Below, in pieces: positions 3,426 to 59,800 of a stretch of 64,000 nt of DNA. A program made the translations under genes and the position numbers. The notes below the pieces were generated by a model, which had not been told where the DNA came from, searched no databases, and worked only from the letters and a program-made list of their open reading frames with translations. Every line of letters starts with the position of its first letter. Within the stretch, counting starts at the first letter, position 1. Source of the DNA: Isurus oxyrinchus (taxonomy: Eukaryota); contig JANJGN010000007.1 of assembly GCA_026770705.1 (NCBI GenBank), positions 109,616,001-109,680,000 of the forward strand, given 5' to 3'.

Positions 3426-4945
3426 GGAGTGATTTCCTGGACAAAGTCTCCATGGCAGCCGCCATCCTGCCAGTGTTGACATCAGTGCATTGCAATGCTG
3501 GTGCTATCACCTCAGCCTGAAGATGGATGGACTCCTCCATCATGCCTTGCAATCTGAGGAGTGCAGTGGACATCCCTTCCTGTTATTCCCTAGCTTACCT
3601 TTGCAGTTCCAGCAACTGAGACATGACCGAGTCCAGAGGCTCATCATCTGACCCGGGCTCAGCAACATCCTGGCCTCCAGTGGTCGTCAGAGTGTCGGGG
3701 ACCTGCCTCCGCCTGCTGTGGATCAGAAAGTGCGATGTGCTCACCAGATTGTGATCCCGGGGCTACTGTAAAGCTAGGTCCCATCTAGGTGTGATTGTGC
3801 TCTGGTGAAGGGTGTGGGTGAGCACTGTGATGAGTATTCAGGGAGGGTGCCTTCGGATTCCTTGTCAGAGGTTTCTTTGGAACTCGAATGGAGGCACTGG
3901 GCCGTGGACTCCATTGGCTGCTTCCTCGATATGCCTGTGAAAGCAAGGGGAGATAATTAATGCATGACAGTGGCCTGTGAAAGAGGACACATCACTCACA
4001 GCATGGTTTTCTAATGTATGTTGAACTGCTGGATCCTCACTTGGTAGAGCAGCACCGACCTCACTGTCAGCACAGGAACAGTCCTGGTCATCGCTGGCCA
4101 GCTGGATGGCTCTGTTTTCAAATTCTGTGAGAACTTCGAATTCCACCAGCCCTCCACCTGTCTGCAACCTTTCCCTCCTGTTGTGAGGCAGTTTGTTCTG
4201 CATAGATAGTGATGGGGAGTGTGTATCAGAACACCTATCGGGCCAGATTATAGGTATGCCTGGCCTGTGTGGGTGGTGAGTGGTCCCATGGACAGCATGA
4301 GGACAATGATGGTGTGTGTAAGAGTGAATGGTGATGCTCCTTGCGCTGGTAGTGAGTGAGGGCCCTGTGGGTATGTGATGGGTTTGTGAGTGAGAAAGTT
4401 GGGAGTGATGAAGAGTGACTTAACTTGGTGGAATGGAGATCATTCATCCTTTTGTGGCACTGGGTGGCAGTCCTCCTCTACAGGGCATTTGTGCTGACCA
4501 TCACTGCCACCGCTTCCCAAGCCAGATTGATGGACATTGCTACCATTCCTCTGGACAGAGCAGGGATAGAACACATCCTGGGGAGACTCCACGGCACCAT
4601 CAGTCGCTCGAGGAACTTGCTGTTGAAGTGTGGGGGCAGGAGGGGGAGGGGGGCTGCAGTCTTTTTTCCGTTGCTTGCCATGTCTGCCAGGCAGTGGTTG
4701 TGAGCTGGTGGCGATGAGCACTTTGCTGGTGGCTGCCTTTTAATGATGGCAGCTGGGGTAATGACAAGCGGGCACATGAGAGCTCGCCTACCATGGAGCT
4801 CATCCAACGTGTCTCGCAGGAGTGAATATATAATGAGGTGGGCTTGGGAAAATACAGCGTGAAAACCCACCATTTTCAACGGTGGGGAGGACTCCATTTT
4901 ACCTGCCCGCTACCACATGAGTGCAATTCTGGGAAAATTCAGCCC
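3425..4945 (-). mobile_element. Harbinger/PIF-like transposon remnant with a spliced Myb/SANT-like ORF
   Basis: MASNGKKTAAP...WEAVAVMVSTNAL...MNDL, then an intron, then KLPHNRRERLQTGGG; terminus GGGCTGAATTTTCCC at 4945-4931. Confidence 0.7.
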
Positions 4946-7045: not shown

Positions 7046-7251
7046 TCAGGCACACGTGGCATCTCTGTCTCTCTTACGGTGCTCCTTGTGCTTTGGTGCA
7101 GTTTCGTTAACTTTTTCTACTCTGCCTGGATTCCTCTGAGATAGCATCTGAATGTTGTCTTTTTTTACTCCTTGTTCCTTGCATTTGGGATTTTGTGTTA
7201 TTGGCTCAGAGCAGCGAACACATTGCTTCATTCGAATGTTGTTTCCATGAG
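7046..7251 (-). CDS. Gene A exon 5: cytoplasmic tail (AHGNNIRMKQCVRCSEP...RDATCA*)
   Basis: Acceptor GTTTTTCTTACAG| is phase-1 compatible. Open hydrophilic frame to TGA at 7048-7046 in non-repeat DNA; the homologous acceptor is kept in copy B. Small intervening exons cannot be excluded. Confidence 0.7.
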
Positions 7252-11375: not shown

Positions 11376-12039
11376 TTCTACTGTCTGATGTTAGTGTAAC
11401 TTGTGGTGATGCTGCTTGAGATACTGAAGAGGTAGTTGCCCTCTGTACCACTCTTTGGTACCATTTTTCCATAGACTAGCATTGCAAACAGCTCCGCAAA
11501 GAGGTTCAGCCAAGTTTTGAGAAACAACTGACTATTATTATCCTTGTGTGCTGCTGTTTGGCGCTGAATGTATTTGTAGATGATGGTACAGCTCTGCATC
11601 TGCCTGTTGGCCAAGACCTTAAAAACATTGGCTCACATAATCATTGCCAGGTATGTGTATCAGGGCGTGCTGAAAGGTTAGTAGCAATTTGGCGAGTTTG
11701 GCCAATGCTAAGTCGTGATCAGCCTGCTAGTCACTATCAACATCCTGGAAGTTACTACTGACCAGAAACTGAATTGGACGAGCCATAAAAATACTGTGGT
11801 TACAACAGCAGGTCAGAGATTGGGAATCCTGTGGTGAATAACTGACCTCCTGTCTCCCCATAGTCCGTCCATCATCTACAAGACACAAGTCAGGACTATG
11901 ATGGAATACCCTCCACTTGCCTGGAGAAGTATAGAGATAAAAACAAAAAACTGTGGATGCTGGAAATCCAAAACAAAAACAAACACAGAATTACCTGGAA
12001 AAACTCAGCAGGTCTGGCAGCATCGGCGGAGAAGAAAAG

Positions 12040-12078
12040 AGTTGACGTTTTGAGTCCTCATGACCCTTCGACAGAACT
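12040..12078 (-). ncRNA. Hammerhead-ribozyme-like motif in the left arm (GAAA mutated to AAAA)
   Basis: Reverse complement reads AGTT-CTGTCGA-A-GGGTC-ATGAG-GACTC-AAAA-CGTC-AACT. Confidence 0.55.
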
Positions 12079-13800
12079 TGAGTTCGAGTCCAAGAAAGAG
12101 TTGAAATATAAGCTGTTTTAAGTTGTGTGTGTGGGGGGCGGAGAGAGAGAGAGAGAGAGAGAGAGAGGTGGAGTGGGGGTGTGGTTGTAGGGACAAACAA
12201 GCAGTGATAGAAGCAGATCATCAAAAGATGTCAACAACAATAATACAAAAGAACACATAGGTGTTAAAGTTAAAGTTGGTGATATTATCTAAACGAATGT
12301 GCTAATTAAGAATGGATGGTAGGGCACTCAAGGCATAGCTCTAGTGGGGGTGGGCAGAGCATAAAAGATATAAAAAAAATAAAAAAAATAAATATTTTTT
12401 TTTTCTTTTTCTCTTTTTATAATGGAAATAGGTGGGAAAAGAAAAATCTATATAATTTATTGGAAGAAAAAGAGAAAAGGAAGGGGGAAACAGAAAGGGG
12501 GTGGGGATGGGAGAGGGAGCTCACAACCTAAAGTTGTTGAATTCAATATTCAGTCCGGATGGCTGTAAAGTGCCTAGTCGGAAGATGAGGTGTTGTTCCT
12601 CCAGTTTGCGTTGGGCTTCACTGGAACAACGCAGCAAGCCAAGGACAGACATGTGGGCAAGAGAGCAGGGTGGAGTGTTAAAATGGCAAGCGACAGGGAG
12701 GTTTGGGTCATTCTTGCGGACAGACCGCAGGTGTTCTGCAAAGCGGTCGCCCAGTTTACGTCTGGTCTCTGCAATGTAGAGGAGACCACATTGGGAGCAA
12801 CGAATGCAGTAGACTAAGTTGGGGGAAGTGCAAGTGAAATGCTGCTTCACTTGAAAGGAGTGTTTGTGTCCTTGGACGGTGAGGAGAGAGGAAGAGAAGG
12901 GGCAGGTATTGCATCTTTTGCGTGGGCATGGGGTGGTGCCATAGGAGGGGGTTGAGGAGTAGGGAGTGATGGAGGAGATGGAGGACACCCTGGTCCAGTC
13001 CTCCATCACCCCCTACTCCTCAACCCCCTCCTATGGCACCACCCCATGCCCATGCAAAAGATGCAATACCTGCCCCTTCACTTCCTCTCTCCTCACTGTC
13101 CAAGGACCCAAACACTCCTTTCAAGTGAAGCAGAATTTCACTTGCATTTCCCCCAACTTAGTCTACTGCATTCGTTGCTCCCAATGTGGTGTCCTCTACA
13201 TTGGAGAGACCAAACGTAAACTGGGCGACCGCTTTGCAGAACACCTGCGGTCTGTCCGCAAGAATGACCCAAACCTCCCTGTCGCTTGCCATTTTAACAC
13301 TCCACCCTGCTCTCTTGCCCACATGTCTGTCCTTGGCTTGCTGCATTGTTCCAGTGAAGCCCAACGCAAACTGGAGGAACAACACCTCATCTTCCGACTA
13401 GGCACTTTACAGCCATCCGGACTGAATATTGAATTCAACAACTTTAGGTTGTGAGCTCCCTCCACCATCCCCACCCCCTTTCTGTTTCCCCCTTCCTTTT
13501 CTCTTTTTTTTCCAATAAATTATATAGATTTTCCTTTTCCCACCTATTTCCATTATAAAAAGAGAAAAAGAAAAAAAATATTTATTTTTTTTTTATTTTT
13601 TACATCTTTTATGCTCTCCCCACCCCCACTGGAGCTATACCTTGAGTGCCCTACCATCCATTCTTAATTAGCACATTCATTTAGATAATATCACCAACTT
13701 TAACTTTAACACCTATGTGTTCTTTTGTATTATTTTTGTTGACATCTTTTGATGATCTGCTTCTATCACTGCTTGTTTGGAACAACCACACCCCCACTCC

Positions 13801-13803
<3 letters not shown>

Positions 13804-13848
<45 letters not shown>
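13804..13848 (+). repeat. (CT)n microsatellite in the Penelope 3' region; shorter (GA)n mirror at ~12141-12167
   Basis: Direct reading of the sequence. Confidence 0.95.
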
Positions 13849-13851
<3 letters not shown>

Positions 13852-13909
13852 CCCCACACACACACCTTAAACCAGCTTATATTTCAACTCTTTCTTGGAC
13901 TCAAACTCA

Positions 13910-13948
13910 AGTTCTGTCGAAGGGTCATGAGGACTCGAAACGTCAACT
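13910..13948 (+). ncRNA. Minimal type I hammerhead-ribozyme-like motif in the Penelope pLTR
   Basis: Stem I AGTT/AACT, core CTGTCGA, stem II GGGTC/GACTC, GAAA, palindromic ACGT stem III, cleavage triplet GUC. Confidence 0.7.
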
Positions 13949-14239
13949 CTTTTCTTCTCCGCCGATGCTGCCAGACCTGCTGAGTTTTTCCAGGTAATTC
14001 TGTTTTTGTTTTTGTTCTGGAGAAGTATAGCTCCAACAATATTCAAGAAACTCAACACCATCCAGGACAATGCAATCTGCTTGATTGGCACCTCATCCAC
14101 CACATTCAACATTCCTTCCCTCCACCATCAACACACAGTGGTAGCAGGGTGTACCATCTACAAGATGCACTGCACAAACTCATCAAGGATCCTTCCGCAA
14201 CACCATCTAAACCTGTGACCTCTACCAGGTCACAGCTAA

Positions 14240-15545
14240 TCTATTATTCGGAATCTATTATAAGGAAACTTTAGCAATGCGCTTAGCAAAGCATAGCATG
14301 GTTAGAGCAAGTCAACATGGTTTTATGAAAGGGAAATCCTTTTTAACAAATTTATCAGCATTTTTGAGGATGTAACTAGTAGGGTAAATGAAGTGAAACC
14401 AGTATATGTCATATACTGTGATTTCCAAAAGGCGTTTAATAAGGTCCATACAAAAGGTTAATAGGCAATGGCTCATGGAGTTTGGGGCAATATATGGCAA
14501 TGGATAAAGGGTTGGTTAATGGACAGGAAGCAAAGAATAGGTGTAAATGGGCCATTTTCAGGTTGGCAGACTGATTCATGGAGCACCGCAAGGATCAGGG
14601 CTAGGGCCTCAGCTATATACAATCTATACTCTCTTCATCTAAGTCATTAATACTGTGTCTAAGTTTACTGATGTTACAAAGCTCGGTAAGAAGGTAATCA
14701 AATGGAGAGGACATAGAGAGGCTGCAAAGAGAGAAAGACAGCTTAAGTGAGTAAAAAACAAGGTGGTTGATGGAGTATAATGTGGAGAAGTGTGGTCATA
14801 AGAATAGGAAAGCAGGAAATATTTTGAAAAATATGAAATTTGTAAATGTTGACGTTCAGCAAAGCGTGGATGTGCTTGTACAAGGGATGCAGAAAGGTAC
14901 AGCAAGCATTTAGGAAGGTAAATGGTATATTGGCCTTCATTGATAGGTGATTGGAGTATTGGAATAAAGAAGTCTTGCTACAATTGTATAGGACTTTGGA
15001 GAGACCCTATCTGGAACACTGTGTGCAGCTTTCATCTCCATATTTAAGGAATTTAAGGTGTTGCATCAGAGGCACTACCAAGAAGGTTCACTAGATTAGC
15101 CCCTAGGATGAAAGGTTGTCCTATGATAAGGAACTGAGTAAACTGGGCTTATATTCCCTGGAATTTGGAAGAATGAGAGGCAACTCATTGAAACATACAA
15201 GAAACTGAAGGAGGCTTGATAGGATAGATGACGAGAGATTTTTTCCCACTGGTCAAGAAATCTAAAGCATAAGCGGCACAGTCTCAGGACAAAAGGCGGC
15301 TCATTTAGGACTGAGATGAGGAGAAATGGTTGTGAATCTTTGGAATTCTCTACCCCAGAGGGCTGTGGATGATCCAACATTGAATACATTTAAGGCTGGG
15401 TAGACAGATCTTTGGTCTCTCAGGGAACCCAGGGATAGGGGGAACAGATGGGAAAGTAAAGTTGAAGCCCAAGGTCAGCCAAGTCATATTCAATGGCAGT
15501 GCAGGCTCAATGGGCTGTATGGTACACTCCTGCTCCTCTTTCATT
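14240..15545 (+). mobile_element. CR1 LINE 3' fragment, decayed
   Basis: QHGFMKGKS, DFQKAFNKV and WIKGWLMDRKQRI remnants plus a CR1 3' tail. Confidence 0.8.
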
Positions 15546-16044
15546 TTCTTAATTGGAGGCCTGTGGGTTGCTGGCTGCTCACCCCCTCACCATCACTTTC
15601 AAAATTGAGGCACAATCCTGAGGCATTGGAAGGTTGACACACCAGCTGGGAGTACCATTTTCAAAGTGCACCCACAACCAATATTGCTCCAATGGGCGAT
15701 TCAAAATCCAACCCTCTGAATTGTATCACATTACTGTAGAGAGACGGAGGAGCTTTATCTGGCTTTAAATATTCTATACCTAATCTGGAAGTTCTTAGTG
15801 CCTAGAAAGGAAGTGTTCCAATCTGCAAAATTAACATTGTTCACCTTGATGAACTCAAAAGTAAATTGCATAAAATATCATCTAAGAATTGAAGTAGAAT
15901 TTTTCATCCTAAAGTTTACTTATTGCAGATTAATAAATTAGTTCACATATCCTTTCAATCTGTTATCATTTCTATATTTGTATAATTGATGAATATTAAC
16001 TCACGAAGTCCAACCATTAATGTAGTGAGGTGGCTCCTCCTTAC

Positions 16045-16164
16045 CTTTAGATTTTTTGCAACAGCAGAATTTACAACAAAGTGCCAATGCAATAATTAGA
16101 AGCAGTAAAGCTATTGCTCCACAGAGGTAGATCCACCAAGGAAAAATGGGATTGGATTCATTTT
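16045..16164 (-). CDS. Gene A exon 4: stalk, transmembrane helix and Cys/Lys-rich juxtamembrane segment
   Basis: Acceptor GTCTTGCAG| and donor AAAG|GTAAGG; 120 nt, phase 1-1. WWIYLCGAIALLLLIIALAL followed by CCKFCCCKKSK. The same exon is conserved in copy B. Confidence 0.9.
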
Positions 16165-17129
16165 CTGCAAGACACATGCAAAACAAAAACATAGTCATTC
16201 ACTTTCAGAAGTACGTTAGCAGGTTCTTAGACCCCAGCTCTTTCTCATGGCTCTATATGGGTGATGTTATGAATGTACACTTCCTGCACAAATACAGAAT
16301 ACCAATCTTCACACCCAATATTCCAATTACTGCTCTTGGGCCATAAAAGATTTGAATCATGACTGTCAAACCCATAAACGTACACTTCATGAGGTGTAAT
16401 GAGTGTGAGAATGTCAAACTTGTTCCTGGTTGGTGTGGGCTAAATCTGTCCACGATTAAGTCCAGGTTAGGTTTTATCAATTAAACAAGGTTGGCTAATA
16501 GAAGTGAACAAATGGCATAGGTATAGTTGATGGTGCTCTCATAAAGATGATGTTAAAAGCATTTACTCTGCATCTTACGCATGTAGAGTTGAAGCCCAAG
16601 ATCAGCCATGATAACAATGAATGGTGGCACAGGCTCAATGGGCTGCATAGTCTACTACAGCTCCTATTTTGTGCGTTTTTGTGTTCTTAATTGGACTCAG
16701 AAGTGTTTGAAGCTCTAACAAAGAAAATATTCTTCTCCGCAGCATTTGCCTTGGTGTAGATCAAAATAAAGCTCCGCCAGACATAATTTTTAAAAATGAT
16801 ATGTCCAACATAAAGCAGCAATAAAAGATTTTTACACTGGGGGAAACACATTTGTAAAAATGCAGCAACAACTTCATAAATGTTTGTGAACACTTTTGCT
16901 CCTATTTCCAAAGAAATTATAAATATGCTGGTAAAGAACACAGTTTACTTAGAAATGCTGAAGAGAGTAGATCTTTAAACATGAATTTATTGCTTGAACT
17001 CTTGCTACAATATCTCAGTTTGCACATATTTCAAAAGTCAAATGTTGAATCTTTAACTCTTTATATAGAAATCACATGAATAATTAGGATAATTGGCATC
17101 CATTTGTTTCTGTCTATCCTGCTTAATGA

Positions 17130-17410
17130 AAGAACTTACGTTTACATAAATATGCGTCACACCCTTGGTCAATCCTGAAGTGCCTTACAACCAGCTTAGT
17201 ACATTTTAAAGTGTAGTTATCGTAATAATGTTGGAAACATGCAGCCAATTTGTGTACAGCAAGGTCCCACAAACACCAATGAAATAAATGACTGCTTCAT
17301 CTGTTTCAGTAACGTTAGTTGAGATAAATGATGGCCAGGACATTGAGAGATCTACCCTGCTCTTCTTTCAAAAGTGTCAAGGAATATTTCACGACCACCT
17401 GAGAGGACAG
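17130..17410 (-). mobile_element. SacSINE1/DeuSINE-like element (paralog 55680-55960)
   Basis: GCAGCCAATTTGTGTACAGCAAGGTCCCACAAAC...GGCCAGGACA...CCTGCTCTTCTT...CCACCTGAGAGG resembles the common shark SINE; recognised from memory. Confidence 0.6.
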
Positions 17411-17954
17411 ATTAAGTTGCCTGTCTCCTGTGGGTTAAATAATTGGTGACAGACAGTGTCTAAACTTACATGTTGATGAGGTACTGGGGATGTGGTAGAT
17501 GTCTGTCTGTTAGAAGAGGACGGAGGAGAAAGGCAGGAACAACATGAGGTTACTGCCAATGGGAATGCATTCTATCTTTTACTTATTAGGTTATCTGCTC
17601 TAAGACCCCTTTGTCCTACAAGAATTAGTGTGCATCAAACAGTGAAGCCGCTGGTCAGCAAGGTATCACTGCTTGCTCATGTCACTGAAATGTGAAAGGC
17701 AGAGTTCTGCAAACACTCTAAAACTTATGAAGGGCCATCAACCACTGATCTCCACTAACAAGTAACTTTCTGGCGACTTGAAAACAATTGGTGGGATAGT
17801 GAGACAACCGTGTTTCTTAGTTATTCTCACTCTAACTTTAATCTTTCATAATTACTATCCACAAATTGCCATGTTATTGCTGTATTGTAGCCCTCAGAAC
17901 ATATCATCTGAGATCTGTACTTCAATCATACAAAACGGCAGGCTGTGGCAATGA

Positions 17955-18100
17955 GCAATGGTAGTATAGTGGAGAAGCAACCCATAAGCATGGACTAATG
18001 ATCCAGACACAAGAGTTCAAAATACCACAACAGAAGCTGGAAAATTTAAATTCATTTAATTAATTAAATCTAGAATCAATGATGGTGACCATGTAACTCC
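17955..18100 (+). mobile_element. HE1-like SINE, 5' part only (truncated at ~18100)
   Basis: tRNA-like head (TGGTAGTATAGTGG...GGACTAATGATCCAGA...GAGTTCAAAATACCAC); the paralog at 56505-56890 is complete. Confidence 0.6.
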
Positions 18101-18258
18101 TGTGTTGACTTAAATTGTTAGTTTGGGGTTTTTTGCCCTTTTATGTCTTCTGTCTTTTCACTCATGTTCAGTCAAAAAGTCCCAAATTTAAATCATAATC
18201 TGTGTTAGGCTAGCCAGAGGGAGCAACTGTTGATGTGCTGCAAGTGGTCTTAATACTA

Positions 18259-19907
18259 ATATACTGGGACATGGGCCCCAGTTATGCCTGTCCCTTTATG
18301 GGGTATGTGGAACATTCCTTGTTCCAGTTCCTACTCTGGCCCCCTCCCATAACTCTTTCTCCGGTACATCAATGACTGCTTCGGTGCCGCTTCATGCTCT
18401 CTTCTGGATCTGGAAAAATTTATTAATTTTGTTTCTAATTTCCAGCCCCCCACCCCCCATCATTTTCATGTGGTCCATCACTGACATTTCCCTTCCCTTC
18501 CTTGACCTCAGTCTCAATTTCTGGTGATAGACTGTCCACCAATATTCATTACAAGCCTACCGACTCCCACTGCTATCTTGACTCACACCCCACTTCCTGT
18601 AAGGAGTCCATCCCATTCTTTCAGTTCCTTCGCCTCCGTTGCAACTGGTCTGATGATGCCACTTTCCAAAACAGTTCCTGTGAATGTCTTTCTTCTTCCT
18701 TAACTGAGGTTTTCCAACCATGGTGGTTGACAGGGCCCTCAACCGTGTCCAGCCCATCTTCTGAGCATCCGCCCTATCACCTTCCTCTCACTCCCAGAAC
18801 CATGATAGGGTCCCCCTCGTCTGCACTTATTATCCCACCAGTCTCCACGTTCAAAGGATCATCCTCTGCCATTTCCACCAACTCCAGCATGATTCCACTA
18901 CCAAATACATCTTCCCTTCACCCTCCGCTGGTGGCTTTCCACAGGGATCATTCCCTCCAGGATACCCTGGTCCACTCCTCCATCACCACCTACACCTCAA
19001 CCCCCTCCCACAGCACCTTCCCATGCAACCACAGAAGGTGCAACACCTGCCCCTTTACTTCCCCTTTCCTCACCGTCCAAGGGCCCAAACATTCCTTTCA
19101 AGTGAAGCAGCACTTCACTTGCACTTCCCTCAATTTAGTCTACTGCATTCGATGCTCCCAATGTGTTCTCCTCTACATTGGAGAGACCAAATGCAGACTG
19201 TCCAAGGGCATGACCCAGACCTCCCTGTCGCTTGCCATTTCAACACAGCACCCTGCTTTCATGCCCACATGTCCGTCCTTGGCTTGCTGCATTGTTCCAG
19301 TGAAGCTCAATGCAAACTGGAGGAACAGCACCTCATCTTCCGACTCGGCACTTTGCAGCCAAACTTAATATTGAGTTCAACAATTTCAGATCATGAACTC
19401 TCTCCTCCATCCCCACCCCCTTTCCGATCCCTCCCTTTTCCAATAATTTATAGTTTTTTTTAATTATAATTTTTTTGTTTTTTTATACACTATTTTTCCT
19501 TTTCCCTCCTATTTTTAAATTTATTTTGATCTATTGTTTCAGCTTCCACCTTTTAGCCCATTTTGATCCCTTCCCCCCACCCCACCCGCACTAGGGCCAT
19601 CTGCCACTAGCTTGTCCTGTTTGCTACCCTCACTGTCCCCATTAGCACACCTTTTAGATAATACCACCACCATCAACACTCCTTTGTCCTTTTGTCTATG
19701 ACATCTTTGGCAGTCTCTTCTTGGCTTCCACCTATCACTGGCCCTCTGTCGAGTTCTCCTGTCCCACCCCCTTCTTCTAACTTATATTTCATCTCATTTC
19801 TGTATGTCTTAGTTCTGATGAAGGGTCATCCAAACTCGAAAGGTCAACTGTGTCCCTCTCCACAGATACTGACAGACCTGCTGAGTTTTTCCAGGTATTT
19901 TTGTTTT
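18259..19907 (+). mobile_element. Older 5'-truncated Penelope-like retroelement (RT C-terminus, GIY-YIG, pLTR), frameshifted
   Basis: MGPSYAC...RYIND (YIDD-like), LPFLD...HYKPTD, NLVYCIRC...LYIGETK; 14-bp TSD TGGTCTTAATACTA at 18245-18258 and 19908-19921. Confidence 0.92.
19811..19849 (+). ncRNA. Hammerhead-ribozyme-like motif with canonical CUGAUGA core, decayed stems
   Basis: AGTT-CTGATGA-AGGGTCATCCAAACTC-GAAA-GGTC-AACT. Confidence 0.6.
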
Positions 19908-20350
19908 TGGTCTTAATACTAGTCTTCTAAGGAGAATAAAAGAACAGATCAGCCAAAATGCCTAATTGATTTCCATTAACAATTACATGTGTACGTGCAT
20001 GTGGGCATGCATATGTGTCCTGATCACACATGAAGAACAAGCAATTAAGTGAGGTACTATGAGATTACGTCAGCAAGGCTCAAGGCACTGAGGAAAGGAA
20101 CAGAGAGAACAAAGGAAAACATTGCATAAAATTAAGTTTTAAAAGTTGTGTAAAATCATATCACTGAGCTCAGCAGATGCAGCTGATGGACTGTGTGAGT
20201 CTGAACCAGCTCCACCGAGTTCACAATAACTGAAAAATCACCAGCACTGCACTTACTGCCTTCCTGGCATCACCGTGAAAATATTTCCTACCAATAGCAG
20301 TGAAACCACAATATACAATGTTTTCACAATTAAATAGGTTTTGTTCCTAC

Positions 20351-20647
20351 CTGCAAAGCGAACAGTGTAATTGACCCAAGTTGGAACCTTGAGAGTCGAG
20401 TGATATACCTCACAGATAAAAACAGTCCCACTCTGAGGAGGCTGTGGCTCTTCCAAATAACTGGAAGCTTCATATAGTCCCTTAGCATTCTTCTCGCTGG
20501 ATGTCTTGACTCCAGCTGTAACTTTTTGACCATCTTTATGCCAAACAATGGTGACATCAGCAGGATAGAACTCAGATGTTTTACACAAACACGTTAGAGA
20601 GCCATTTGCAGAAAAGTTTGGCAAAATCGTCAGAGGATGTGGAGAAG
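20351..20647 (-). CDS. Gene A exon 3: C1-set Ig domain
   Basis: Acceptor TTTATCTCTAG| and donor GCAG|GTAGGA; 297 nt, phase 1-1. C1 hallmarks: CxxxxFYPxxVxIxW, GLYEASSYL and F-x-C-x-V-x-H (FICEVYH). Confidence 0.93.
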
Positions 20648-20722
20648 CTAGAGATAAATTAAAAAACAACAAATTTCTGAATTTCCAAGTTGGATACGAT
20701 ATACTGATATATTCCTCTTGGA

Positions 20723-20904
20723 CAAAAACAGAATTACCTAGAAAAACTCAGCAGGTCTGACAGCATCGGCGGAGAAAAAAAGAGTTGACATTTCGAGTCC
20801 TCATGACCCTTCGACAGAACTGTCGGATGCTGTCAGACCTGCTGAGTTTTTCCAGGTAATTCTGTTTTTGTTTTGGATTTCCAGCATCCGCAGTTTTTTG
20901 TTTT
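20723..20904. mobile_element. Mini Penelope-like insertion with a 13-bp TSD, ~75 nt upstream of the C1 exon acceptor
   Basis: Inverted pLTR ends; TSD TATTCCTCTTGGA at 20710-20722 and 20905-20917; hammerhead motif on the minus strand at ~20783-20821. Confidence 0.88.
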
Positions 20905-22024
20905 TATTCCTCTTGGATATCATTTCACAATATTGCAGTTGTGCTTTACCTATGAGTATTAACTGTTCCGTAGTTCATCGAAACTGCATTCTGGCTGTCA
21001 ATTATGTTGCATCAATTTTCAGAGCTGGGCAACTGAGAACAAGCAAAAATGAGAGACATGGCGTGTTCACAACACATTGCCATGCAATAACACTGCATAC
21101 AAAAATGTAGGTTATCCAAGAATTTATTCGATGAATATGTTGTTTGTTGGTTCAATCTCTGGTCTGCTCTGGATTAACCAGTCTCATTTATGCATAATTA
21201 AAATTTGGCTCAGCATCCCAGAGCTAGGTAGAGAAAATTAAATCAGCCCATGTTTCAAATTGCTACCTAACAGTGCCTGTGGAAATGTCACGTGAGAACA
21301 TCAGTCCAGGCTACAATTGGGTTTAATTGCAATGTTTCATGAAACTCATTGCCCAGGCTAACACATTGGATATTTAAGCAAAATTGCTGTTCAACAGATA
21401 AAAGAGAGGGAGCTGAATGATAATGGTAAATGATGTAAACTACTTGTGTACAATGTGACATTTCACTTTGCTAAATTTGTAAAAAAAAAATGCAGAGCTT
21501 TGGGGAAAGGGCAGGGGAGCAGGAGTTGCTCTTGCAGAGAGCTGGCACAGACACAAAGGGCTGAATGGCATCCTTTTGTGCGACAACCATTTTATGATTC
21601 TATTCTGTTGCTATAAATTTGTATTAGCTAGGATCAAGAAAAATTTTAACCTAATTATGACTTTTTTCCAGAATACTGTTTCAACAAGAATAATAATTGC
21701 CAATTTTAATAGAAGACTCAGCACCACAATCTACAGCACAGAACAGATAATTCGACCAAGCTAGTCTATGCTGGTGTTTATACACCAAACAATCCACTTC
21801 CCATGCTACCTAATATCTCTCTATTCCCTTCTTCATTTGTTCATCAAGTCTTCCTTAAAAGGTGACGATGCAATCTTCTTTAAACACTAATAGATTTAGC
21901 TCTTACACGGTTGTGGGGGAGGAAAATTGCTGGTTACTCTGCATAGCAACAGTTTAAGTGCATTCATGTGGGTCAATTTAATATAAATACGTTAAATCAT
22001 TTACACATTATTGCACAGTACAGC

Positions 22025-31273: not shown

Positions 31274-31328
31274 CTGTGCAAGAAAGGGCCAGGATGAGTA
31301 TGGGCTGAAGGTGGGTTCTTCCAGACAT
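31274..31328 (-). CDS. Gene A exon 1: signal peptide (MSGRTHLQPILILALSCT)
   Basis: ATG at 31328-31326, hydrophobic core ILILAL, donor ACAG|GTACGT in phase 1. Joins the V exon to give ...SCTVVAG|NVVQ, a plausible signal-peptidase site. Confidence 0.8.
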
Positions 31329-31369: not shown

Positions 31370-31600
31370 CAGCTGGTTGGGCGGGGCGCGGGGAGAGGAA
31401 GGTGACTTTGTTTTCCAGTTAATGCAATGTGCAATCGTTCGATATCAGGCTTACAATCTTCCGGTTTCAATACTGGGTGCACTTTGTAAGTAAAACCTGC
31501 AAGCCACGGTGTGAGCTGTAAGCATAAATTGCAGCGGTTTAGATCTCACCAACTTTTGAAAGCCTATTATCTAAACCTGAAATCAAAGGTCACGTCATGC
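31370..31600 (-). promoter_or_regulatory. Putative proximal promoter of gene A
   Basis: Immediately upstream of the ATG: E-box CAGCTG (31370-31375), GC box GGGCGGGG (31379-31386), ETS-like GAGGAA (31395-31400), and overlapping ATCAAAG / AAAGGTCA / TCACGTCA (31582-31597). The 28-31.8 kb region is visibly richer in CpG than its flanks. Confidence 0.4.
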
Positions 31601-31777
31601 GCAAGAAGAGGTGTTGGGGATATTAGTCTGTGAGGTGGGGGGGGGGGGAGCTGTGTTGTCCACTCGGTTTCCTCTCTTGAAGCCAGTGCCGCGGGCATCA
31701 CACACCCACACACGCACGTTAGCTGCACAATTCACAGCTGCACGAAAGCTAAACGCGCAAGAGGCTCCACCACCCTC

Positions 31778-32655
31778 GAGAGGGAGGGGGCGAGGGAGGG
31801 AGGGGAGGGAAAGGGGAGGGAGGAGGGGAGGGGGAAGAAGAAGAGGAGAGGGAGGAGGAGGAGGGGGAAGGGGGGCGGGGGGAAGGAGAGGGGAGAAGGG
31901 GATGGGGGAGCAGTGGGAAGAGGGAGGGATGGAAGGGGAGGGTTTGTGGGGGGATGGGGTGGGTGTGTGGGGATGGGGGAGGGTGTGTGAAGGGGTCGAG
32001 GTGGGGGGAGGAGGTGGAGGAGAGGGGAGTGGGAGGCGGGAGGGAGAGGGGAGGTGGGAGGGAGAGGGGAGGGCAAGGTAGGAGGGAGGGTGTAGGAAGT
32101 GAGGTGGTGGGGAAGAGTGATGTGGGGAGCAAGGGGGTGATGTGGGGGAAAGGGGCGAGGTGGGAGGGAGGGGGAGCAGTCGGAGGGCAGAGGAGGCAAG
32201 AGGGGAGGGATCAAAATGGGAGGGGACGAGGTGGGAGGGGGAAGGGAGACATGGGAGTGGGGAGAGGGCAGTGGAGGGAATGAGGTGGGAGTGGTTAGGG
32301 TACGGGGAGGGGATGTGGGGGGAGCATGGAGGGGATGATGTAGTTGGGAGGGGGAAGGGTGTGAGGTGAGGTGGGGAGGGGCAGGGGAGGGGTCAAGGGA
32401 GAGGGGGTGGGGGCAAGGGGGACGTTGTGAGCTGGGAGGGCAAGGGGGTGAGAGGCCAAGGGGGTAGGAGGGGTGTTGGGAGGGGGAAGGGGGCGAGGTG
32501 GGGAGGGGTGAGGTGGGGAGGGGTCAAGAGGGAGGTGGGGGAGCAAGGTGTGGGGAGGGCCAAGGTGGGGGGGTAAGGGAGGCAGGGGGCAAGGTGGGGA
32601 GGACAGGGCGAAGTGGGGAGAAGGGGACAAGGTGAGGATAAGGAGGTGAAGGGGG
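31778..32655 (+). repeat. G/purine-rich low-complexity tract (~880 bp)
   Basis: Dense GGG/GGGG runs separated by A/T; very few C residues. Confidence 0.95.
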
Positions 32656-34375
32656 GCAAATGTTCTGGACTCCTGGTCGATCCATGGTGGGTGGATCCCT
32701 GCCCAAAGAATCCTGGCCAGCGAACTGGCAGGAGCTGGAGACCAAAGTCACCAATCGCTTGCAGTGCTGGACAGGACTGCTCCGAGTGCTGTCTTACCAG
32801 AGTCGACTGCTGGTCGTAAACCAGTTGATTGCCGCTGTGTTCTGGTACCAGCTGCTCACTTTGACCCTTCCCCCAGACTTTGTCACAAAAATCCAGATCA
32901 TTCTCTTCGATGACTTCTGGGACAAAAGGCTGCACTGGGTCACTGCTGAGGTTCTGAGTCTCCTGCTTAGGGAGGGCGGTCAGGTGGTGACTTTCCACCT
33001 TCAGGCCCTGCAGCAATACTGTTACATCCTCTCCAAGATGGTGTGCTCTGGTGAGGTATTTCTTCTGCCAGGTGCCGAGCCTGAATTATGATGTGCAGCT
33101 CCTGTTTGTAGATTGGAGGGGCCTTTGTGGCTCCTTGCAGACATTGCATATCTTTTACCAGGACCCAATCAAAGTCTGGAACATGGTCATCACGCAATGC
33201 AGCTCTTTGTTATCAGGAGTAGGGGATATCATCAGAGAGCCGCTGCTCAGGAATCCACCCTTCCACCCTTTACAGTGGCTGGTGGAGTGGAGGGCTGTGG
33301 CTGCTGTGGTGAGCAGGATCAGGAATGTGCTGGGTAGTGGATGAGTGGGCTGGATGCTTCCATAGGAGTTGGTGCCTCGTGCGTCCGTGGATGAATGGCT
33401 CGCAGCCAGTGCCATTCATTACATTAAGACAGTCATGCTCAGCCCTGGCATCACCCCAGTTCTTGAGGTGTCACAGCGCGTGGTGGTCTTCCATCTGAGC
33501 CTATCCCTGTTCGGACGGATTGCCACATTGGCTCCAGGACCAGAGCCCTCCCTTGGGCGCCGGTGCCCTGCAACCTGAGTCACCTCACAGAATCGCCCTC
33601 CTTGTCCTTTAGCATGGCACAGAAGTGTTTCCTGTATGGGCTGCTGCTGCACACCCTTCCTTGTCCTCGCCCACCTCCCAGACACCCTGGCGTGCCTTGG
33701 TACCGTCCAGCAGCGGAGGTCCACTGTGGGGTGTCCTCTACGGGGGTGTTCTCCCAGTTTCTACTGGGGACATGAGGTGGAGGGGGTTGCATGCAGCAGT
33801 CTCATACAGCAGTCAGTTGCGTCAGTTCACAGGCTCCCAGGATAGCATCTTTTGCGGCCTTGTGGGGACTGTGGACCATATATTATTAGGATGTCATAGG
33901 CTGCACACCCTTTTCAGTTTGCGGAAAAACATTTTACTGAAGTTTTGTTTGAATTTCAGTCCCACGCTCCTGATTTACGGGCACCCAGTGCAGAGGGGGG
34001 CGCTGGGAGGGAGGAGGATCTCCTCGTGAACCTGCTCCTGGGCCCAGCCAAGTTGGCCATTAATAGGCCCAGTCAGTGGGCAATCGAGGAGGTCGTCTGA
34101 CCCGACTGTCTGCCCCTCTTCCATGGCTATGTCCACAGCCAGTGTCCCTGAAGAGGGAGCACACGGTTTCAGCCAGCACTGTCAAGGCCTTCCATGCCCA
34201 GTGGGCACCGCTGTGACTGGGGTGCTTTATTCACCCTCCCAATCACATTTTGGTTTAAAGTTTGTAAGTTTCCTTTAAATTGTCTTTTTGTTTGCATTCT
34301 CCTTAATTCAAGGGGCTACTTTTATTTTGTCCCTCATTTTGTTAATTTAGTTTAATTGGATGGACGCAAAAGAGT
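32655..34375 (+). mobile_element. 5'-truncated Tx1-type LINE (ORF2 C-terminus with Zn-finger remnant and T-rich 3' UTR)
   Basis: NWQELETKVTNRLQCWTG...LSYQSRLLVVNQL...FWDKRLHWV; IFCGLVGTVDHILLGC is a CCHC remnant. Confidence 0.85.
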
Positions 34376-34379
34376 TAAT

Positions 34380-40300: not shown

Positions 40301-40465
40301 GCAACCTGAGCTACCTCGCAGAATTGCCCTCGGTGTCCTTTAGCACAGCACGGAGGGGTTTCCTGTATGGGCTGCTGCTGCACACCTTTCACTTCCTTGC
40401 CCTCACCCACCACCTGGACATGCGCTGGTGTGCCTTGTTGCTATCCATCGGCAGAGGCCCCCAGT
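34380..40465 (+). mobile_element. Near full-length, decayed Tx1-type LINE (ORF1 ~35320-37102; ORF2 from ~37159: APE endonuclease and RT); 3' end cut by a Harbinger remnant
   Basis: ORF1: TVETCVKALAGVVGPSAIV...GKAVFFL, LSNVLPFIP and zinc knuckle CKEVGHIQKNC. ORF2: IASLNTKG, FLQETH, GGVASL, VNVYTP, TDHH, YWHFNNLLL, KSPGLDGL, HPDQSY, SAHVDN. Many stops and frameshifts; the 5' boundary is uncertain. Confidence 0.88.
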
Positions 40466-43851: not shown

Positions 43852-44057
43852 TCAGGCACACGTGGGGTCATTGTCTCTTTTATAGTGTTTCTTGCACTTT
43901 GATGCAGTTTAGTTAACTTTTTCTACTCTGCTTGGATTCCTCTGAGATGGTGTCTGAGTGATGTGGTCTCTTACTCCTTGTCTTTTGCATTTGAGATTTT
44001 GTGTTCTTGGCTCAGAGCAGCGAACACATTGCCTCATTCAAATGATGTTTTCATGGC
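43852..44057 (-). pseudogene. Gene B cytoplasmic-tail exon with premature stops (would encode only GHENII*)
   Basis: Collinear 206-nt homologue of 7046-7251 with the acceptor retained. CGA>TGA at 44040-44038 and GAA>TAA at 43911-43909. Confidence 0.8.
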
Positions 44058-50000: not shown

Positions 50001-50256
50001 TCTCAGGACAAGAGGCTGATCATTTAGAACTGAGATTAGGAGAAATTATTTCACTCCAATGGTTGTGAATCTTTGGAATTCTCTACCCAGAGGGCTGTGG
50101 ACGATCCAACATTGAATCCATTTAAGGCTGGGTGGACAGATGTTTGGTCTTCCAGGGAATCCAGGGATAGGGGGAGCAGCTGGGAAAGTAGAGTGAAGCC
50201 CAAGATCAGCCAAGGTCATATTGAATGGCAGTGCAGGCTCAACAGACTGTATGGTA

Positions 50257-54579: not shown

Positions 54580-54699
54580 CTTTAGATTTTTTGCAACAAC
54601 AGAATTCACAACAAAGTACCAGTGCAATAATCAGAAGCAGTAAAGCTATTACTCCACAGATGTAGATCCACCAAGGAAAAGTGGGATTGGAGTCATTTT
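54580..54699 (-). CDS. Gene B (paralog) transmembrane exon, intact
   Basis: ENDSNPTFPWWIYICGVIALLLLIIALVLCCEFCCCKKSK; same 120-nt length and splice sites as the copy A exon at 16045-16164. Confidence 0.85.
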
Positions 54700-56504: not shown

Positions 56505-56890
56505 GAACAATGGTCGTATAGTGGAGAAGCAACCCATAAGCATGGACTAATGATCCAGACACAAGATTTGAAATACCACCACAGAAGTTGGAAAACTTAA
56601 ATTCATTTAATTAATTAAATCTAGAATCAATGATGGTGATTATGTAACTCCTGGATTGTCATAACAACCCATCTAGTTCACTAATGTCCTTCATGAAAAG
56701 CAATTTGTCATCCTTACTCAGGCTAGTCCATATGTGACTCAAGGCCCAGTGTAAAGGAACCATCTATTCTGTATTCTGGTATAGCCTAGAAAACCTGCTG
56801 ATTTCAAGAATGCGGCTCATCACCACCCACCCAAGGGTAATAAGGGATGGGCAATAAATGTGGTGCTCACATCCTATAAATGAATTTTAA
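56505..56890 (+). mobile_element. Complete HE1-like SINE (tRNA-like head, core, CR1-type tail)
   Basis: Ends TTTCAAGAATGCGGCTCATCACCAC...AGGGATGGGCAATAAATG...CACATCC, the tail shared with the HER1-like LINEs in this window. Confidence 0.7.
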
Positions 56891-59800
56891 AAATGTCTGG
56901 CTCTGGTTCATCATGTTCACTGTTAGGGGGGAATATAGGGATATAATTTGTATTAGCTGGGATCAAGTAAATTTTTAAACTAATTATGACTTTTTTCCAG
57001 AATACTGTTTCATCAAGAATAATTGCCAATTTCAGTAGAAGACCCAGCATCACAATCTACAGCACAGAAACAAGCCATTCAGCCAAGCTAGTCTATGCTG
57101 GTGTTTATACACAAAGCAACCCACTTCCCATCCTACCTAATATCTTTCTATTCCCTTCTTAATGTGTTCATCAAGCCTTCCTTAAAAGGTGACAATGCAA
57201 TCTTCTTTAAACACAGAGATTTAGCTGTTACAAGGTCATGGATGAGGAAAATTGCTGGTTGCTCTGTGCAGCAACATTTTAAGTATATTCAGGTGGGTCT
57301 ATTTCATATAAATACATTAAATTATTTACACACTATCGCAGAGTACAGCTTCAAGGCTTAACATTACAGTTAGGAGCAGGAGACCACCAGATGATCCCTC
57401 AGGCTGCTCTGCCATTAAATAAAACAATGGTTGCTCTGATTTCAATTCCACTTTCCAGCCTGCTCCTTATTACCTTGACATCCCTATAGTTCATAAATTT
57501 GTCTGTCTCAGCCTTGAATATGTTCAATGACTTAGCTTCCACAGCTGTCTGATGCAGGGAATTCCAAAGATTCACGACTTTGAGAGAAGAAATTCCTCCT
57601 CATCTTCGTCCTAAATGGACAACCTCTCATTTTGAAACACAGTCTCTAATTATTGATTCTCCTTTAAGAGGAAAGAGCTCTCTTGGTTAAAGTTTATAGT
57701 AAAATTCTAAATGTATTCTTTCCAATTTCACTAGAATTTCCATTCAGAGGAAATTTTTATGACCATGTTTACATGGTGCAACACAAAGACCATAGTAATT
57801 TTCATTCCTCTCAATGTGTTCTGGCAGATATTTTAACATGTAAAATAGAAATAAGGCTGTTTTTTCTGAATTTTTATCTTCTCATATTAATTTTATCTTT
57901 CTGCTTCATATCATTGTGTCCAGGGACATGCATGCATAATTAAAATGCAAACATTTCAATTCATTTTCATTTAAACACCTTCAAAAACTGGTGACAAATG
58001 GCCTCAAAGCAGGGCAAAAGATGGAACTTTAACTTCCATCGCCTAAGTGAAACTACATTTCGCTATGCTACACCTGATCTGGGAGGTGCACCCTCCCAAA
58101 CGGAGGGACAGAGGGTTAACACTGGGTGTCTAAATGGGAAGATTTGCATTGGCAGCATTAACCTCAATGAGCATTTTTTCTTTTAAAATCTCAGAAAGAT
58201 GCTGTGATGTTACATATTGTCAGGAGCCAAACCATGAAAATAGTTCCATCTGATTGTTTCCCCTTGTCAGATGAGATGTACATCACTGTCAAAGTTGAAC
58301 TTCCTTTTACATAGCCTTTTTTACAATGCTCCAAAGCACTTCACCTATTTGGCCACAGCAAATTCCTATAAAGGGGAGAGGAGAAAATAAGAAGGCTAAG
58401 AGGAGATTTGATAGAGGTGTTCAAAATCGTGAGATGGGCGGACAGAGTAGATAGGGAGAAACTGTTACCACTCGTAAAATGATCAAGAACAATGGGGCAC
58501 TGATTTAAAATGATTTGCAAAAGAATGTGAGAAATAACTTTTTCACACAGGTCTGGAATGCACTGGAAGGAAGTGTGGTAGAGGCAGGTTCAATTAAGGC
58601 ATTTAGGAGGGCATTAGATGATTATTTAAATAGAAACAATGTGCAGGGTTACGGAGAAAAGGGAGAATAATGATGCTGAGTCATAATGCTCATTCAGAGA
58701 GCCAGTGCAGAATGAAGGGCCAAATGGCCTCCTTTTGCACTGTAACAACTCTGTGTTTCTGTGATAAACAATGAGATCAGTTTTTTGATGATTTTCCTTG
58801 TGGGATGTGTGTTGACCAGGACACTGGGATAACACGCCTGCTCTTTTTTTTTAATAGTACCATGAGATTTTATACTTGCACCCGAGTGGGTAGTCATGTA
58901 CTTGGCTTAATGTTCCATCTGGATTGCACTGAATTTCAGACAATGTACCTAAGTCTTTGAAGTGCTGCTTGAATTCAAACCCAACCTAAATCAGAATGTA
59001 CTAATCTACAATTAAAACAAGTCTATGAAATTATAATAATTCAGCCTAGAACCAGGGGATAAACATTTTTGATTGGATGTGAAAGGTTTAAGAAAGAGGA
59101 CAGGAAAAACAGTGGGAAGTTCATAGGTTTGACCTAATAGCTATTACAGGGATGTGGTTGCAAAGTGACCATGGTTTTCAACTAAATATTCATGATACTT
59201 AACTTTTAGAAGACATAGGCAAAATAGAAAAGGAGGAGGATAGCCCTGACAATAAAGAATGGGGTGAAGTCAGTGGAGAAAAAATGGACCTTAGCTCAGA
59301 AAATCAAGAAGTAGAATCAATTAGGTTGGAGCTAAGAACATGGAAGGTGTGTCCACGATGTGGCCAAAGAAGTTGACTACCAACCTGTAAATTCTTCCAA
59401 TATGCCTGATGGCAGGCAGAAAGAGCTGGAGAGTTTCCTGGTCAGTCATACTGCATAAGGCAACAGCAATCTACTGCAATGCTTTGCCAAACATAATGAT
59501 CGAGCAATGCAATGAAAGTCCATGATCTCCATGGGCACGGTACCTAAAGGAGGAAGGGGAGCTAAGAAATAGCAAGGCACAGAAACATTTGTAGGAGTTG
59601 TTTATAGGCCACCTAGCTTTAGTTGTAGTGTAGGGCAAAGTATAAATTAGGAAATTAGAGGTGCATAATATAAAGATAATACAGTAGTCAGCGGGACAGT
59701 AATCTTCATTTAAGCTGTGCAAACCAAACTTGCAGTAATAGTGTGGAGGGGGGAAGTTCATGCAATGTATAGAAGATAGTTATATAAATCAGTATGGTAA

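What the first reader, a model, noticed from the sequence alone, without database searches (positions are those of the whole stretch)
18101..21612. The C1 exon sits in a 3.5 kb block present in copy A only: V-C1-TM versus V-TM paralogs
Collinearity breaks at 18100/56652 and resumes at ~21613/56944. Copy A has 3.5 kb here, including the C1 exon; copy B has ~290 bp. All introns are phase 1, so V can splice to TM in frame and copy B would be a single-V, NKp30-like receptor. Copy B retains the intact HE1-like SINE across the left breakpoint while copy A's SINE is cut. That is compatible either with gain of the C1 block in A (exon shuffling onto a V-TM gene) or with two independent deletions. Either way, neighbouring paralogs differ by a whole C1 domain.
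Basis: partly seen in the sequence, partly recalled or inferred. Interest (0 to 1): 0.8.

Follow-up and report, generated by a model that had tools for sequence, protein, structure and literature searches.

The report
Shark immune-receptor duplicate lost its C1 exon
A shark immune-receptor gene has a neighbouring duplicate that lost its constant-domain exon by deletion and carries stop codons in its tail exon, so this is ordinary decay of a gene copy, not the birth of a new receptor by exon shuffling.

Summary
A ~37 kb unit is duplicated (A 2250-28736, B 39245-64000). Collinearity breaks at 18113/56664 and resumes at 21616/56945. Copy A has 3.5 kb there and copy B 281 bp.

The A-only block holds a minus-strand C1-set exon (20351-20647). 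All four introns are phase 1.

- **Polarity is settled as loss in B.** All 16 of 16 relatives, from sharks to the chimaera Callorhinchus, carry V plus C1. So do 55 of 56 strong hits in the exhaustive search.
- **Copy A is the conserved gene.** It is near-identical, exon by exon, to an annotated great white shark V-C1-TM-tail protein, so the "gain by exon shuffling" model fails.
- **About 2 kb of the block is Penelope-like retroelement.** The cut in A's SINE coincides with the start of that element.
- **"V-TM receptor" cannot be shown.** The window has only one V exon, copy A's. Copy B's would lie beyond base 64000.
- **Copy B looks decayed.** Its tail exon has two stops and pN/pS 1.39.
- **Copy B is still expressed.** Its TM exon is intact and appears in exon-bounded RNA contigs.
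- **The deletion is real and old.** Its right-hand junction is bridged in an independent sample and in a sister species.

Copy B is best read as a transcribed, decaying duplicate. Interest is low to moderate.

The parts
18114..21615 (.). Block present in copy A only (3502 bp)
   Evidence: Self-BLAST; breakpoint alignments
18114..19920 (+). Old, 5'-truncated Penelope-like retroelement (PLE#1); its start coincides with the cut in A's SINE
   Evidence: 18959-19440 is 81% identical to 12982-13501, whose ORF gives a GIY-YIG hit at E 1.6e-4, just under Pfam's cut-off. 19811-19909 matches the element terminus 13910-14008. A 309-aa ORF at 18439-19365 runs continuously into the GIY-YIG-homologous part. 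The stretch 18114-18438 is assigned by inference only.
20351..20647 (-). C1-set exon of copy A (297 nt, phase 1 on both sides)
   Evidence: Pfam C1-set E 7.2e-13. 98 of 98 residues identical to P0005. An RNA contig of run X19 joins the C1 exon end to the TM exon.
20722..20907 (.). Short palindrome of young Penelope-like termini, 75 bp upstream of the C1 splice acceptor
   Evidence: 94-96% identical to 11979-12078 and 13910-14009 in both orientations
17954..18113 (+). 5' part of the tRNA-headed SINE kept in copy A
   Evidence: Alignment with B 56505-56664
56505..56896 (+). Whole SINE in copy B, spanning the left breakpoint
Evidence: Contig depth of 89,568 and 173,727 in two bins against about 30-45 in flanks.
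56897..56944 (.). 48 bp of non-repeat sequence present only in copy B, between the SINE end and the deletion junction
   Evidence: no match elsewhere in the window
31275..31328 (-). Leader exon of copy A
   Evidence: 16 of 17 residues identical to P0005
30700..31005 (-). VJ-type V exon of copy A; the only V exon in the window
   Evidence: Pfam V-set E 8.3e-10; 100 of 101 residues identical to P0005; no second V exon
16045..16164 (-). TM exon of copy A
   Evidence: 38 of 39 residues identical to P0005
7049..7251 (-). Cytoplasmic tail exon of copy A, intact
   Evidence: 64 of 64 aligned residues identical to P0005
54580..54699 (-). TM exon of copy B: open frame, AG and GT kept, transcribed
   Evidence: In run X7 a 386-nt contig matches 54579-54699 with 0 mismatches and continues 261 nt off the stretch. 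In run X19 a 257-nt contig matches with 3 mismatches.
43855..44057 (-). Tail exon of copy B with two in-frame stops (codons at 44040-44038 and 43911-43909)
   Evidence: pN/pS 1.39 against copy A

Best explanation
The window holds two tandem copies of a ~37 kb unit carrying a minus-strand, non-rearranging IgSF gene. The gene's exons are leader, VJ-type V, C1, TM and cytoplasmic tail, all joined by phase-1 introns.

Copy A is the conserved, functional gene. It is the orthologue or allele of an annotated great white shark protein.

After the duplication two separate events hit the C1-TM intron:
1. **In copy B** a deletion of at least ~1.5 kb of non-repeat DNA removed the C1 exon. It left the old SINE, 48 bp of flank, and then the sequence homologous to A 21616 onward.
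2. **In copy A** a 5'-truncated Penelope-like element sits exactly where the SINE is cut. Its insertion, or a later deletion at its edge, removed the SINE's 3' part and the 48 bp.

Copy B also acquired two stop codons and unconstrained change in its tail exon. Its TM exon is still transcribed and spliced.

Copy B is therefore most likely a transcribed, decaying duplicate (pseudogene).

**Shown:**
- the breakpoints;
- the exon structure;
- the ancestral V-C1 architecture;
- the stops;
- transcription of the B TM exon;
- the right-hand junction in a sister species.

**Inferred:**
- the order and mechanism of the two events;
- that B makes no useful protein.
For: **Duplication and breakpoints:**

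**Exons and phases:**

**V-C1 is ancestral**
- The C1 exon query found a 284-aa Heterodontus protein with V and C1.
- A search with that protein gave 16 proteins from 10 chondrichthyan genera. All 16 carry Pfam V-set and C1-set.
- The exhaustive search with P0005 gave 56 hits below 1e-30. In 55 of them the best stretch runs through the C1 region. The exception, P0058, is a V-only isoform X2 of a Pristis gene whose X1 isoform is 324 aa.

**Copy A is the conserved gene**
- Against P0005 (C. carcharias): leader 16/17, V 100/101, C1 98/98, TM 38/39, tail 64/64.

**A and B are young relative to the family**
- K2P between A and B is 0.084-0.136 over five intronic segments (17,937 aligned bases). It is 0.19-0.20 in two GC-rich distal segments.
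- Callorhinchus relatives are only 36-42% identical in protein.

**Copy B is decaying**
- The tail exon has two stops.
- Tail pN/pS is 1.39 (25.5 non-synonymous against 4.5 synonymous differences).
- The TM exon's K2P of 0.080 equals that of its flanks (0.087 and 0.101).

**Retroelement content of the block:**

**The junction is real and old**
- Contigs bridge 56945 in X7 (56706-57083, another sample of the same species).
- They also bridge it in X5 (at least 56885-57003, sister species, DNA).
- X19 covers 56915-57244, with 30 letters on the left side.
Against: - Copy B's V exon and promoter are outside the window, so B could still be a complete V-TM gene.
- B's TM exon keeps its frame and both splice sites. 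It appears in exon-bounded RNA contigs in two species, which a functional gene would also show.
- TM pN/pS is 0.54 (6 against 3 differences). That is too few changes to exclude weak constraint.
- The first stop in B's tail would still leave a membrane protein with a short tail.
Polarity therefore rests on protein architecture, not on an outgroup's intron.
- The left breakpoint lies inside a high-copy SINE, and none of the 32 contig pieces listed crosses it (2253 further pieces were not shown).
- The 5' limit of the Penelope-like element at 18114 is inferred.
Confidence: 0.8

Rival explanations
1. Copy B is a working gene: a single-V (or otherwise shortened) membrane protein with a very short cytoplasmic tail, acting as a decoy or paired partner of the V-C1-TM receptor encoded by copy A.
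For: - B's TM exon has an open frame with AG and GT kept.
- An X7 contig matches it with 0 mismatches, stops exactly at both exon ends and continues 261 nt elsewhere.
- A B-type contig with 3 mismatches is seen in the sister species' run X19.
- The deletion junction is shared by the sister species, so B has persisted.
- All introns are phase 1, so V to TM stays in frame.
Against: - No V exon of B is visible.
- The tail exon has two stops and pN/pS 1.39.
- The TM exon is no more conserved than its flanking intron.
- Keeping 40 codons open and four splice bases intact at this divergence is expected by chance (my estimate, not a tool result).
- No V-TM protein appears among the 16 hits or the 150 listed.
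- Only four letters upstream of the TM exon are in the X7 contig. They do not continue the match into the intron, so the upstream partner is unknown.
Confidence: 0.13
2. Copy A gained the C1 exon by exon shuffling onto an ancestral V-TM gene, and copy B shows the ancestral state.
For: - B has the intact SINE and A a cut one.
- The A-only block is rich in retroelement sequence that could in principle have carried DNA in.
Against: - All 16 of 16 relatives, including batoid and holocephalan ones, have C1 in the same place.
- A's C1 is 98 of 98 identical to the Carcharodon orthologue. tblastn identities of the other relatives to it range from 38-41% (Callorhinchus) and 45-60% for P0007, P0008, P0010 and P0011, whose alignments run past the exon end, up to 61-73% for the remaining eight sharks.
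- A and B introns are still 86-92% identical, so the duplication is far younger than the family.
- B keeps 48 bp after the SINE that A lacks, so A also lost sequence.
Confidence: 0.03
3. The missing 3.5 kb in copy B is an assembly collapse.
For: - The left breakpoint lies inside a high-copy SINE where short-read contigs break.
- None of the 32 contig pieces listed crosses 56606-56671; 2253 further pieces were not shown.
Against: - The right junction 56945 is bridged by contigs from another sample of the species (X7, 56706-57083).
- It is also bridged by a sister species' DNA run (X5, at least 56885-57003).
- The SINE is continuous across 56664.
- A B-type TM exon exists as a distinct sequence in RNA contigs.
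Confidence: 0.03

Closest known systems
Annotated chondrichthyan V-C1-TM gene (P0005, named by NCBI 'immunoglobulin lambda-1 light chain-like', Carcharodon carcharias) and its relatives in sharks, rays and Callorhinchus
   Same: Copy A has the same five-exon product and is near-identical to P0005. It shares the J-like motif at the end of V, the C1-set domain, the Cys-rich juxtamembrane stretch and the conserved tail.
   Different: Copy B lacks the C1 exon and has a stop-ridden tail. The automatic names disagree with one another: tapasin-like, CD276 homolog, NCR3 ligand 1-like, SIRP-like, lambda light chain-like. The family therefore has no agreed name in the sources I saw.
NKp30 / NCR3 (single VJ-type V domain receptor)
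   Same: A non-rearranging V exon with a J-like end. The V domain matches PDB NKp30 chains along its whole length at E about 5e-4. A V-TM product of copy B would have a comparably short stalk (stalk length of NKp30 is recalled).
   Different: The conserved gene has a C1 domain. The TM segment has no charged residue, whereas NKp30's arginine is recalled. The similarity is weaker than to pIgR or Robo Ig domains. Shark NCR3-family papers (Kinlein 2021, Flajnik 2012) were not held, so I could not check whether this gene is one of their subtypes.
UrIg / UrIg2 (non-rearranging shark VJ-C genes; PMC12227049, section 7 and passages read)
   Same: A single-exon VJ domain, a split leader and C1-set domains. 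The C1 exon hits PDB 9dmx (UrIg2) at E 1.7e-15 for the whole chain, best domain 4e-5.
   Different: Nurse shark UrIg2 has nine C domains, and UrIg also has several. This gene has one C1 and a distinct tail.
Exon-loss pseudogenes in tandem segmental duplications
   Same: A young duplicate with one exon deleted, stops in another, extra transposon insertions, and residual transcription.
   Different: Nothing essential. The only open point is the unseen V exon.

Membership tests
Chondrichthyan V-C1-TM-tail IgSF gene (P0005 orthologue group) | Leader, VJ-type V, C1-set, TM and conserved tail exons in that order, all phase 1 | tested here: met
   Copy A. Exon-wise identity to P0005 is 16/17, 100/101, 98/98, 38/39 and 64/64.
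Chondrichthyan V-C1-TM-tail IgSF gene (P0005 orthologue group) | Copy B carries the C1 exon and an open tail exon | tested here: not met
   No C1 exon in 39245-64000. Two stops in the tail exon.
NKp30 / NCR3 | Single V domain with no C domain | tested here: not met
   Copy A and all 16 relatives have C1. For copy B it is not testable because its V exon is outside the window.
NKp30 / NCR3 | Charged residue in the TM segment for adaptor pairing (feature recalled, not from a call) | tested here: not met
   The hydrophobic core of both TM exons has no Arg, Lys, Asp or Glu.
NKp30 / NCR3 | Specific V-domain sequence kinship | tested here: inconclusive
   PDB NKp30 chains match at E about 5e-4 (23 bits), below pIgR and Robo Ig domains.
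NKp30 / NCR3 | Linkage to the MHC | not testable with these tools
   The window holds no MHC marker, and no genome context was available.
UrIg / UrIg2 | VJ domain followed by several C domains | tested here: not met
   One C1 exon only. For the UrIg2 architecture.
B7 family (V plus C, TM) | V-set plus CD80-like C domain | tested here: inconclusive
   Pfam C2-set_2 scores E 4.9e-5 but C1-set scores E 7.2e-13 on the same exon. Atlas neighbours mix B7, CD200, butyrophilin and light-chain-like clusters.
Unprocessed pseudogene (copy B) | Premature stops, a lost exon and relaxed constraint | tested here: met
   Two stops and the deleted C1 exon. Tail pN/pS is 1.39. TM exon K2P is 0.080 against 0.087 and 0.101 in its flanks. 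Transcription persists.

The most novel reading that the evidence does not exclude
Copy B is not dead. It has been kept since before the two lamnid-like species split, as an expressed, C1-less and almost tail-less membrane protein (V-TM). It would act as a decoy or pairing partner for the V-C1-TM receptor, a natural case of domain loss creating an NKp30-like single-V receptor from a V-C1 ancestor.
Probability: 0.12. Interest if true: 0.55.

Novelty: new member of a known kind. Interest (0 to 1): 0.25.

Why it matters
The evidence points the other way: V-C1 is ancestral here and the C1-less copy is a derived, decaying duplicate.

What remains of some value:
- There is a clean exon map of a V-C1-TM gene that is conserved across chondrichthyans and has no agreed name.
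- There is a dated example of exon loss in a tandem duplicate. The A/B K2P of about 0.12 is roughly five times the ~0.023 mismatch rate between the two species' contigs.
- A C1-less copy is still transcribed in two species.

Tried and rejected
**Steps that led nowhere or could not be done**
- **Other array units.** I looked for notes on them or on the sequence beyond 64000 in the scan's findings. Nothing useful turned up beyond the notes on this window and one palindrome 14.6 kb upstream.
- **tRNA and Rfam scans.**
  - ARAGORN on the B SINE found no tRNA.
  - Rfam at E up to 0.1 on 17800-21800 gave only a chance hairpin match on the 20741-20852 palindrome, and no hammerhead.
- **Pfam on the block's ORFs.** The three ORFs of 18234-19460 gave nothing. 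The Penelope-like reading of 18114-18958 rests on ORF continuity and on my recall of Penelope reverse-transcriptase motifs.
- **Naming the family.**
  - The Atlas gave only generic V-plus-C neighbours.
  - I searched papers for 'UrIg' with 'shark', 'PRARP', 'VJ-C1' with 'cartilaginous fish' and 'nonrearranging', and 'shark NCR3'. None named this gene.
  - Kinlein 2021, Flajnik 2012 and Ohta & Flajnik 2015 were not held. I know them only from reference lists and recall.
  - Kinship to chicken PRARP is a recalled lead and was not tested.
- **Papers actually read.** PMC12227049: outline, section 7 and found passages. PMC10751288 and PMC10450919: found passages only. No supplements were opened.
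- **V-TM junction in copy B.** The single read-laying run gave an X7 contig with only 4 letters upstream of the B TM exon, so the partner exon is unknown.
- **Searches not run.** I did not use the third homologous-protein search, structure prediction or fold search, because the question did not turn on them.
- **Spliced model.** The joined spliced model of the window gene was never built or searched. Exons were handled one by one, and the database protein P0005 served as the full-length query.
Full report
**1. What is there**

The window holds two tandem copies of a long unit: A at 2250-28736 and B at 39245-64000, 80-89% identical by BLAST. The alignment is cut by the window end, so B continues beyond 64000.

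Within the copies, collinearity breaks at 18113/56664 and resumes at 21616/56945. A has 3502 bp in the gap and B has 280 bp.

**2. The gene**

The gene is on the minus strand:

| Exon | Coordinates |
|---|---|
| Leader | 31328-31275 |
| V | 31005-30700 |
| C1 | 20647-20351 |
| TM | 16164-16045 |
| Tail | 7251-7049 |

- Every exon border has AG and GT, and every intron is phase 1.
- Pfam calls V-set (E 8.3e-10) and C1-set (E 7.2e-13).
- The best solved-structure matches of the C1 exon are antibody constant domains and UrIg2.
- The V exon ends in a J-like Gly-x-Gly-Thr motif and matches NKp30 only weakly, at E about 5e-4.
- tblastn finds no second V or C1 exon anywhere in the window.

This last point matters. 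The only V exon belongs to copy A, and copy B's would lie about 2 kb past the window end. "V-TM" for copy B is thus an extrapolation, not an observation.

**3. Which state is ancestral**

- The C1 reading frame found a 284-aa Heterodontus protein with V and C1.
- Searching with that protein gave 16 proteins. They come from Heterodontus, Chiloscyllium, Hemiscyllium, Carcharodon, Heptranchias, Stegostoma, Mustelus, Scyliorhinus (two species), Pristiophorus and Callorhinchus. All 16 carry V-set and C1-set.
- The exhaustive profile-free search with P0005 gave 56 hits below 1e-30. In 55 of them the best matched stretch runs through the C1 region.
- The one exception, P0058, is a V-only isoform X2 of a Pristis gene whose X1 isoform has 324 aa.
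- A candidate without C1, P0082, turned out to hold half a C1 domain.
- The ten clusters I looked up are all from sharks, rays or Callorhinchus.
- Copy A matches the Carcharodon carcharias protein P0005 at 16/17, 100/101, 98/98, 38/39 and 64/64 residues, exon by exon.

A and B differ by K2P 0.084-0.136 over five intronic segments and share transposon insertions. Their split is therefore far younger than a family that reaches the chimaera at 36-42% protein identity. Copy A keeps the ancestral architecture and copy B lost the exon. The exon-shuffling (gain) model is not tenable.

**4. Anatomy of the block and the breakpoints**

The A-only block has four parts:
- **18114 to about 19920:** an old, 5'-truncated Penelope-like element on the plus strand.
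  - It is 81% identical to the GIY-YIG-bearing arms of the 11932-14017 palindrome.
  - Its terminus is at 19811-19909.
  - A 309-aa ORF runs into the homologous part.
- **19920-20722:** unique sequence holding the C1 exon.
- **20722-20907:** a small palindrome of young Penelope-like termini.
- **20907-21615:** unique sequence.

Only about 1.5 kb of the block is thus non-repeat DNA.

In B the 280 bp is the 3' part of a repeat with a tRNA-like head, plus 48 bp of unique sequence. That repeat reaches contig depths of 89,568 and 173,727, against about 30-45 in the flanks. A keeps only the first ~160 bp of the repeat, and the cut coincides with the start of the Penelope-like element.

At least two events are therefore needed:
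- Loss of the SINE 3' part and the 48 bp in A, most simply as a target deletion at the retroelement's 5' junction. This is inference.
- A deletion of at least 1.5 kb in B that took the C1 exon.

The exact left end of B's deletion cannot be defined, because A has lost the matching sequence.

**5. State of copy B**

- **TM exon (54699-54580).** It keeps its frame and both splice sites. It is no more conserved than its flanks: K2P 0.080 against 0.087 and 0.101. Its pN/pS is 0.54, from 6 against 3 changes.
- **Tail exon (44057-43855).** It has two in-frame stops. Its K2P against A is 0.195 and its pN/pS is 1.39.

**6. Reads**

The stretch 54100-57350 is held at about 0.9 of its sampled words by runs of one species. 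It is held at about 0.38 by runs of a second species whose contigs differ by roughly 2-3%.

- **X7** (first species, another sample, probably RNA):
  - A 386-nt contig matches the B TM exon from 54579 to 54699 with no mismatch.
  - It stops at both exon ends and runs on for 261 nt elsewhere.
  - The introns on either side have zero depth.
  - The B TM exon is therefore transcribed and spliced at its donor.
  - Only four letters lie upstream, so the partner exon is unknown.
- **X19** (second species, probably RNA), which holds two distinct contigs:
  - A 1794-nt contig has 8 mismatches, and its loose end reads the end of the C1 exon. This is the A-type mRNA and confirms the C1-to-TM splice.
  - A 257-nt contig has 3 mismatches. 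This is the B type.
- **The right junction at 56945** is bridged by three runs:
  - X7 covers 56706-57083.
  - X5 (second species, DNA) covers at least 56885-57003.
  - X19 covers 56915-57244.

The deletion is therefore real and predates the split of the two species. The left breakpoint lies inside the high-copy repeat, and none of the 32 contig pieces listed crosses it; 2253 further pieces were not shown.

**7. Comparison with known families**

- Copy A belongs to a V-C1-TM-tail gene conserved across chondrichthyans. Automatic annotation names it inconsistently.
- It is not UrIg or UrIg2, which have several C domains.
- It fails two NKp30 features: it has a C domain, and it has no charged TM residue.
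- I could not read the shark NCR3-family paper, so this gene may already be described there as a subtype.

**8. Verdict**

- Polarity is resolved as loss.
- The "V-TM receptor" reading is unproven and, given the tail stops and neutral pattern, unlikely.
- This is an ordinary case of a tandem duplicate losing an exon and decaying while still transcribed.
- The boldest reading still open is a retained C1-less decoy, at about 0.12.

Noticed in passing
P0001, P0003, P0004, P0006, P0014/P0015: In five species NCBI predicts an isoform that skips the phase-1 TM exon and joins C1 directly to the conserved tail. This would be a possible soluble form of the receptor. Pristis also has a V-only isoform (P0058).
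   Followed up: partly
window 50256-53827: A 3.6 kb insert present only in copy B, in the TM-tail intron. It carries a LINE-type reverse transcriptase on the minus strand (RVT_1, E 4.8e-15) and is flanked by a 230-bp direct repeat (50026-50256 and 53827-54058, 92% identical). Copy A has that sequence only once (15307-15524).
   Followed up: partly
window 11932-14017: A palindrome present only in copy A, made of two inverted Penelope-like arms in the TM-tail intron (12474-12982 and 12982-13501 are inverted copies). One arm's ORF gives a borderline GIY-YIG hit at E 1.6e-4.
   Followed up: partly
window 55549-57083: The probable RNA run X7 has near-perfect contigs over this intronic stretch of copy B (769, 239 and 375 nt), while neighbouring intron has none. 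This could be unspliced, antisense or repeat-driven transcription, or DNA carry-over.
   Followed up: no
window 15307-18113 versus 53827-56664: The segment around the TM exon is less diverged between the copies (K2P 0.084) than the other intronic segments (0.118-0.136). That could reflect a past gene-conversion tract.
   Followed up: no
window 2250-4841 and 31500-42000: GC-rich (0.53-0.59), low-complexity, proline- and glycine-coding sequence with repeats between the two gene copies. The A/B divergence there is higher (K2P 0.19-0.20).
   Followed up: no
window 16045-16164 and 7049-7251: The juxtamembrane Cys cluster and a Cys-x-x-Cys tail motif are conserved from Callorhinchus to sharks. The tail has no obvious tyrosine signalling motif, so how the receptor signals is unknown.
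   Followed up: no
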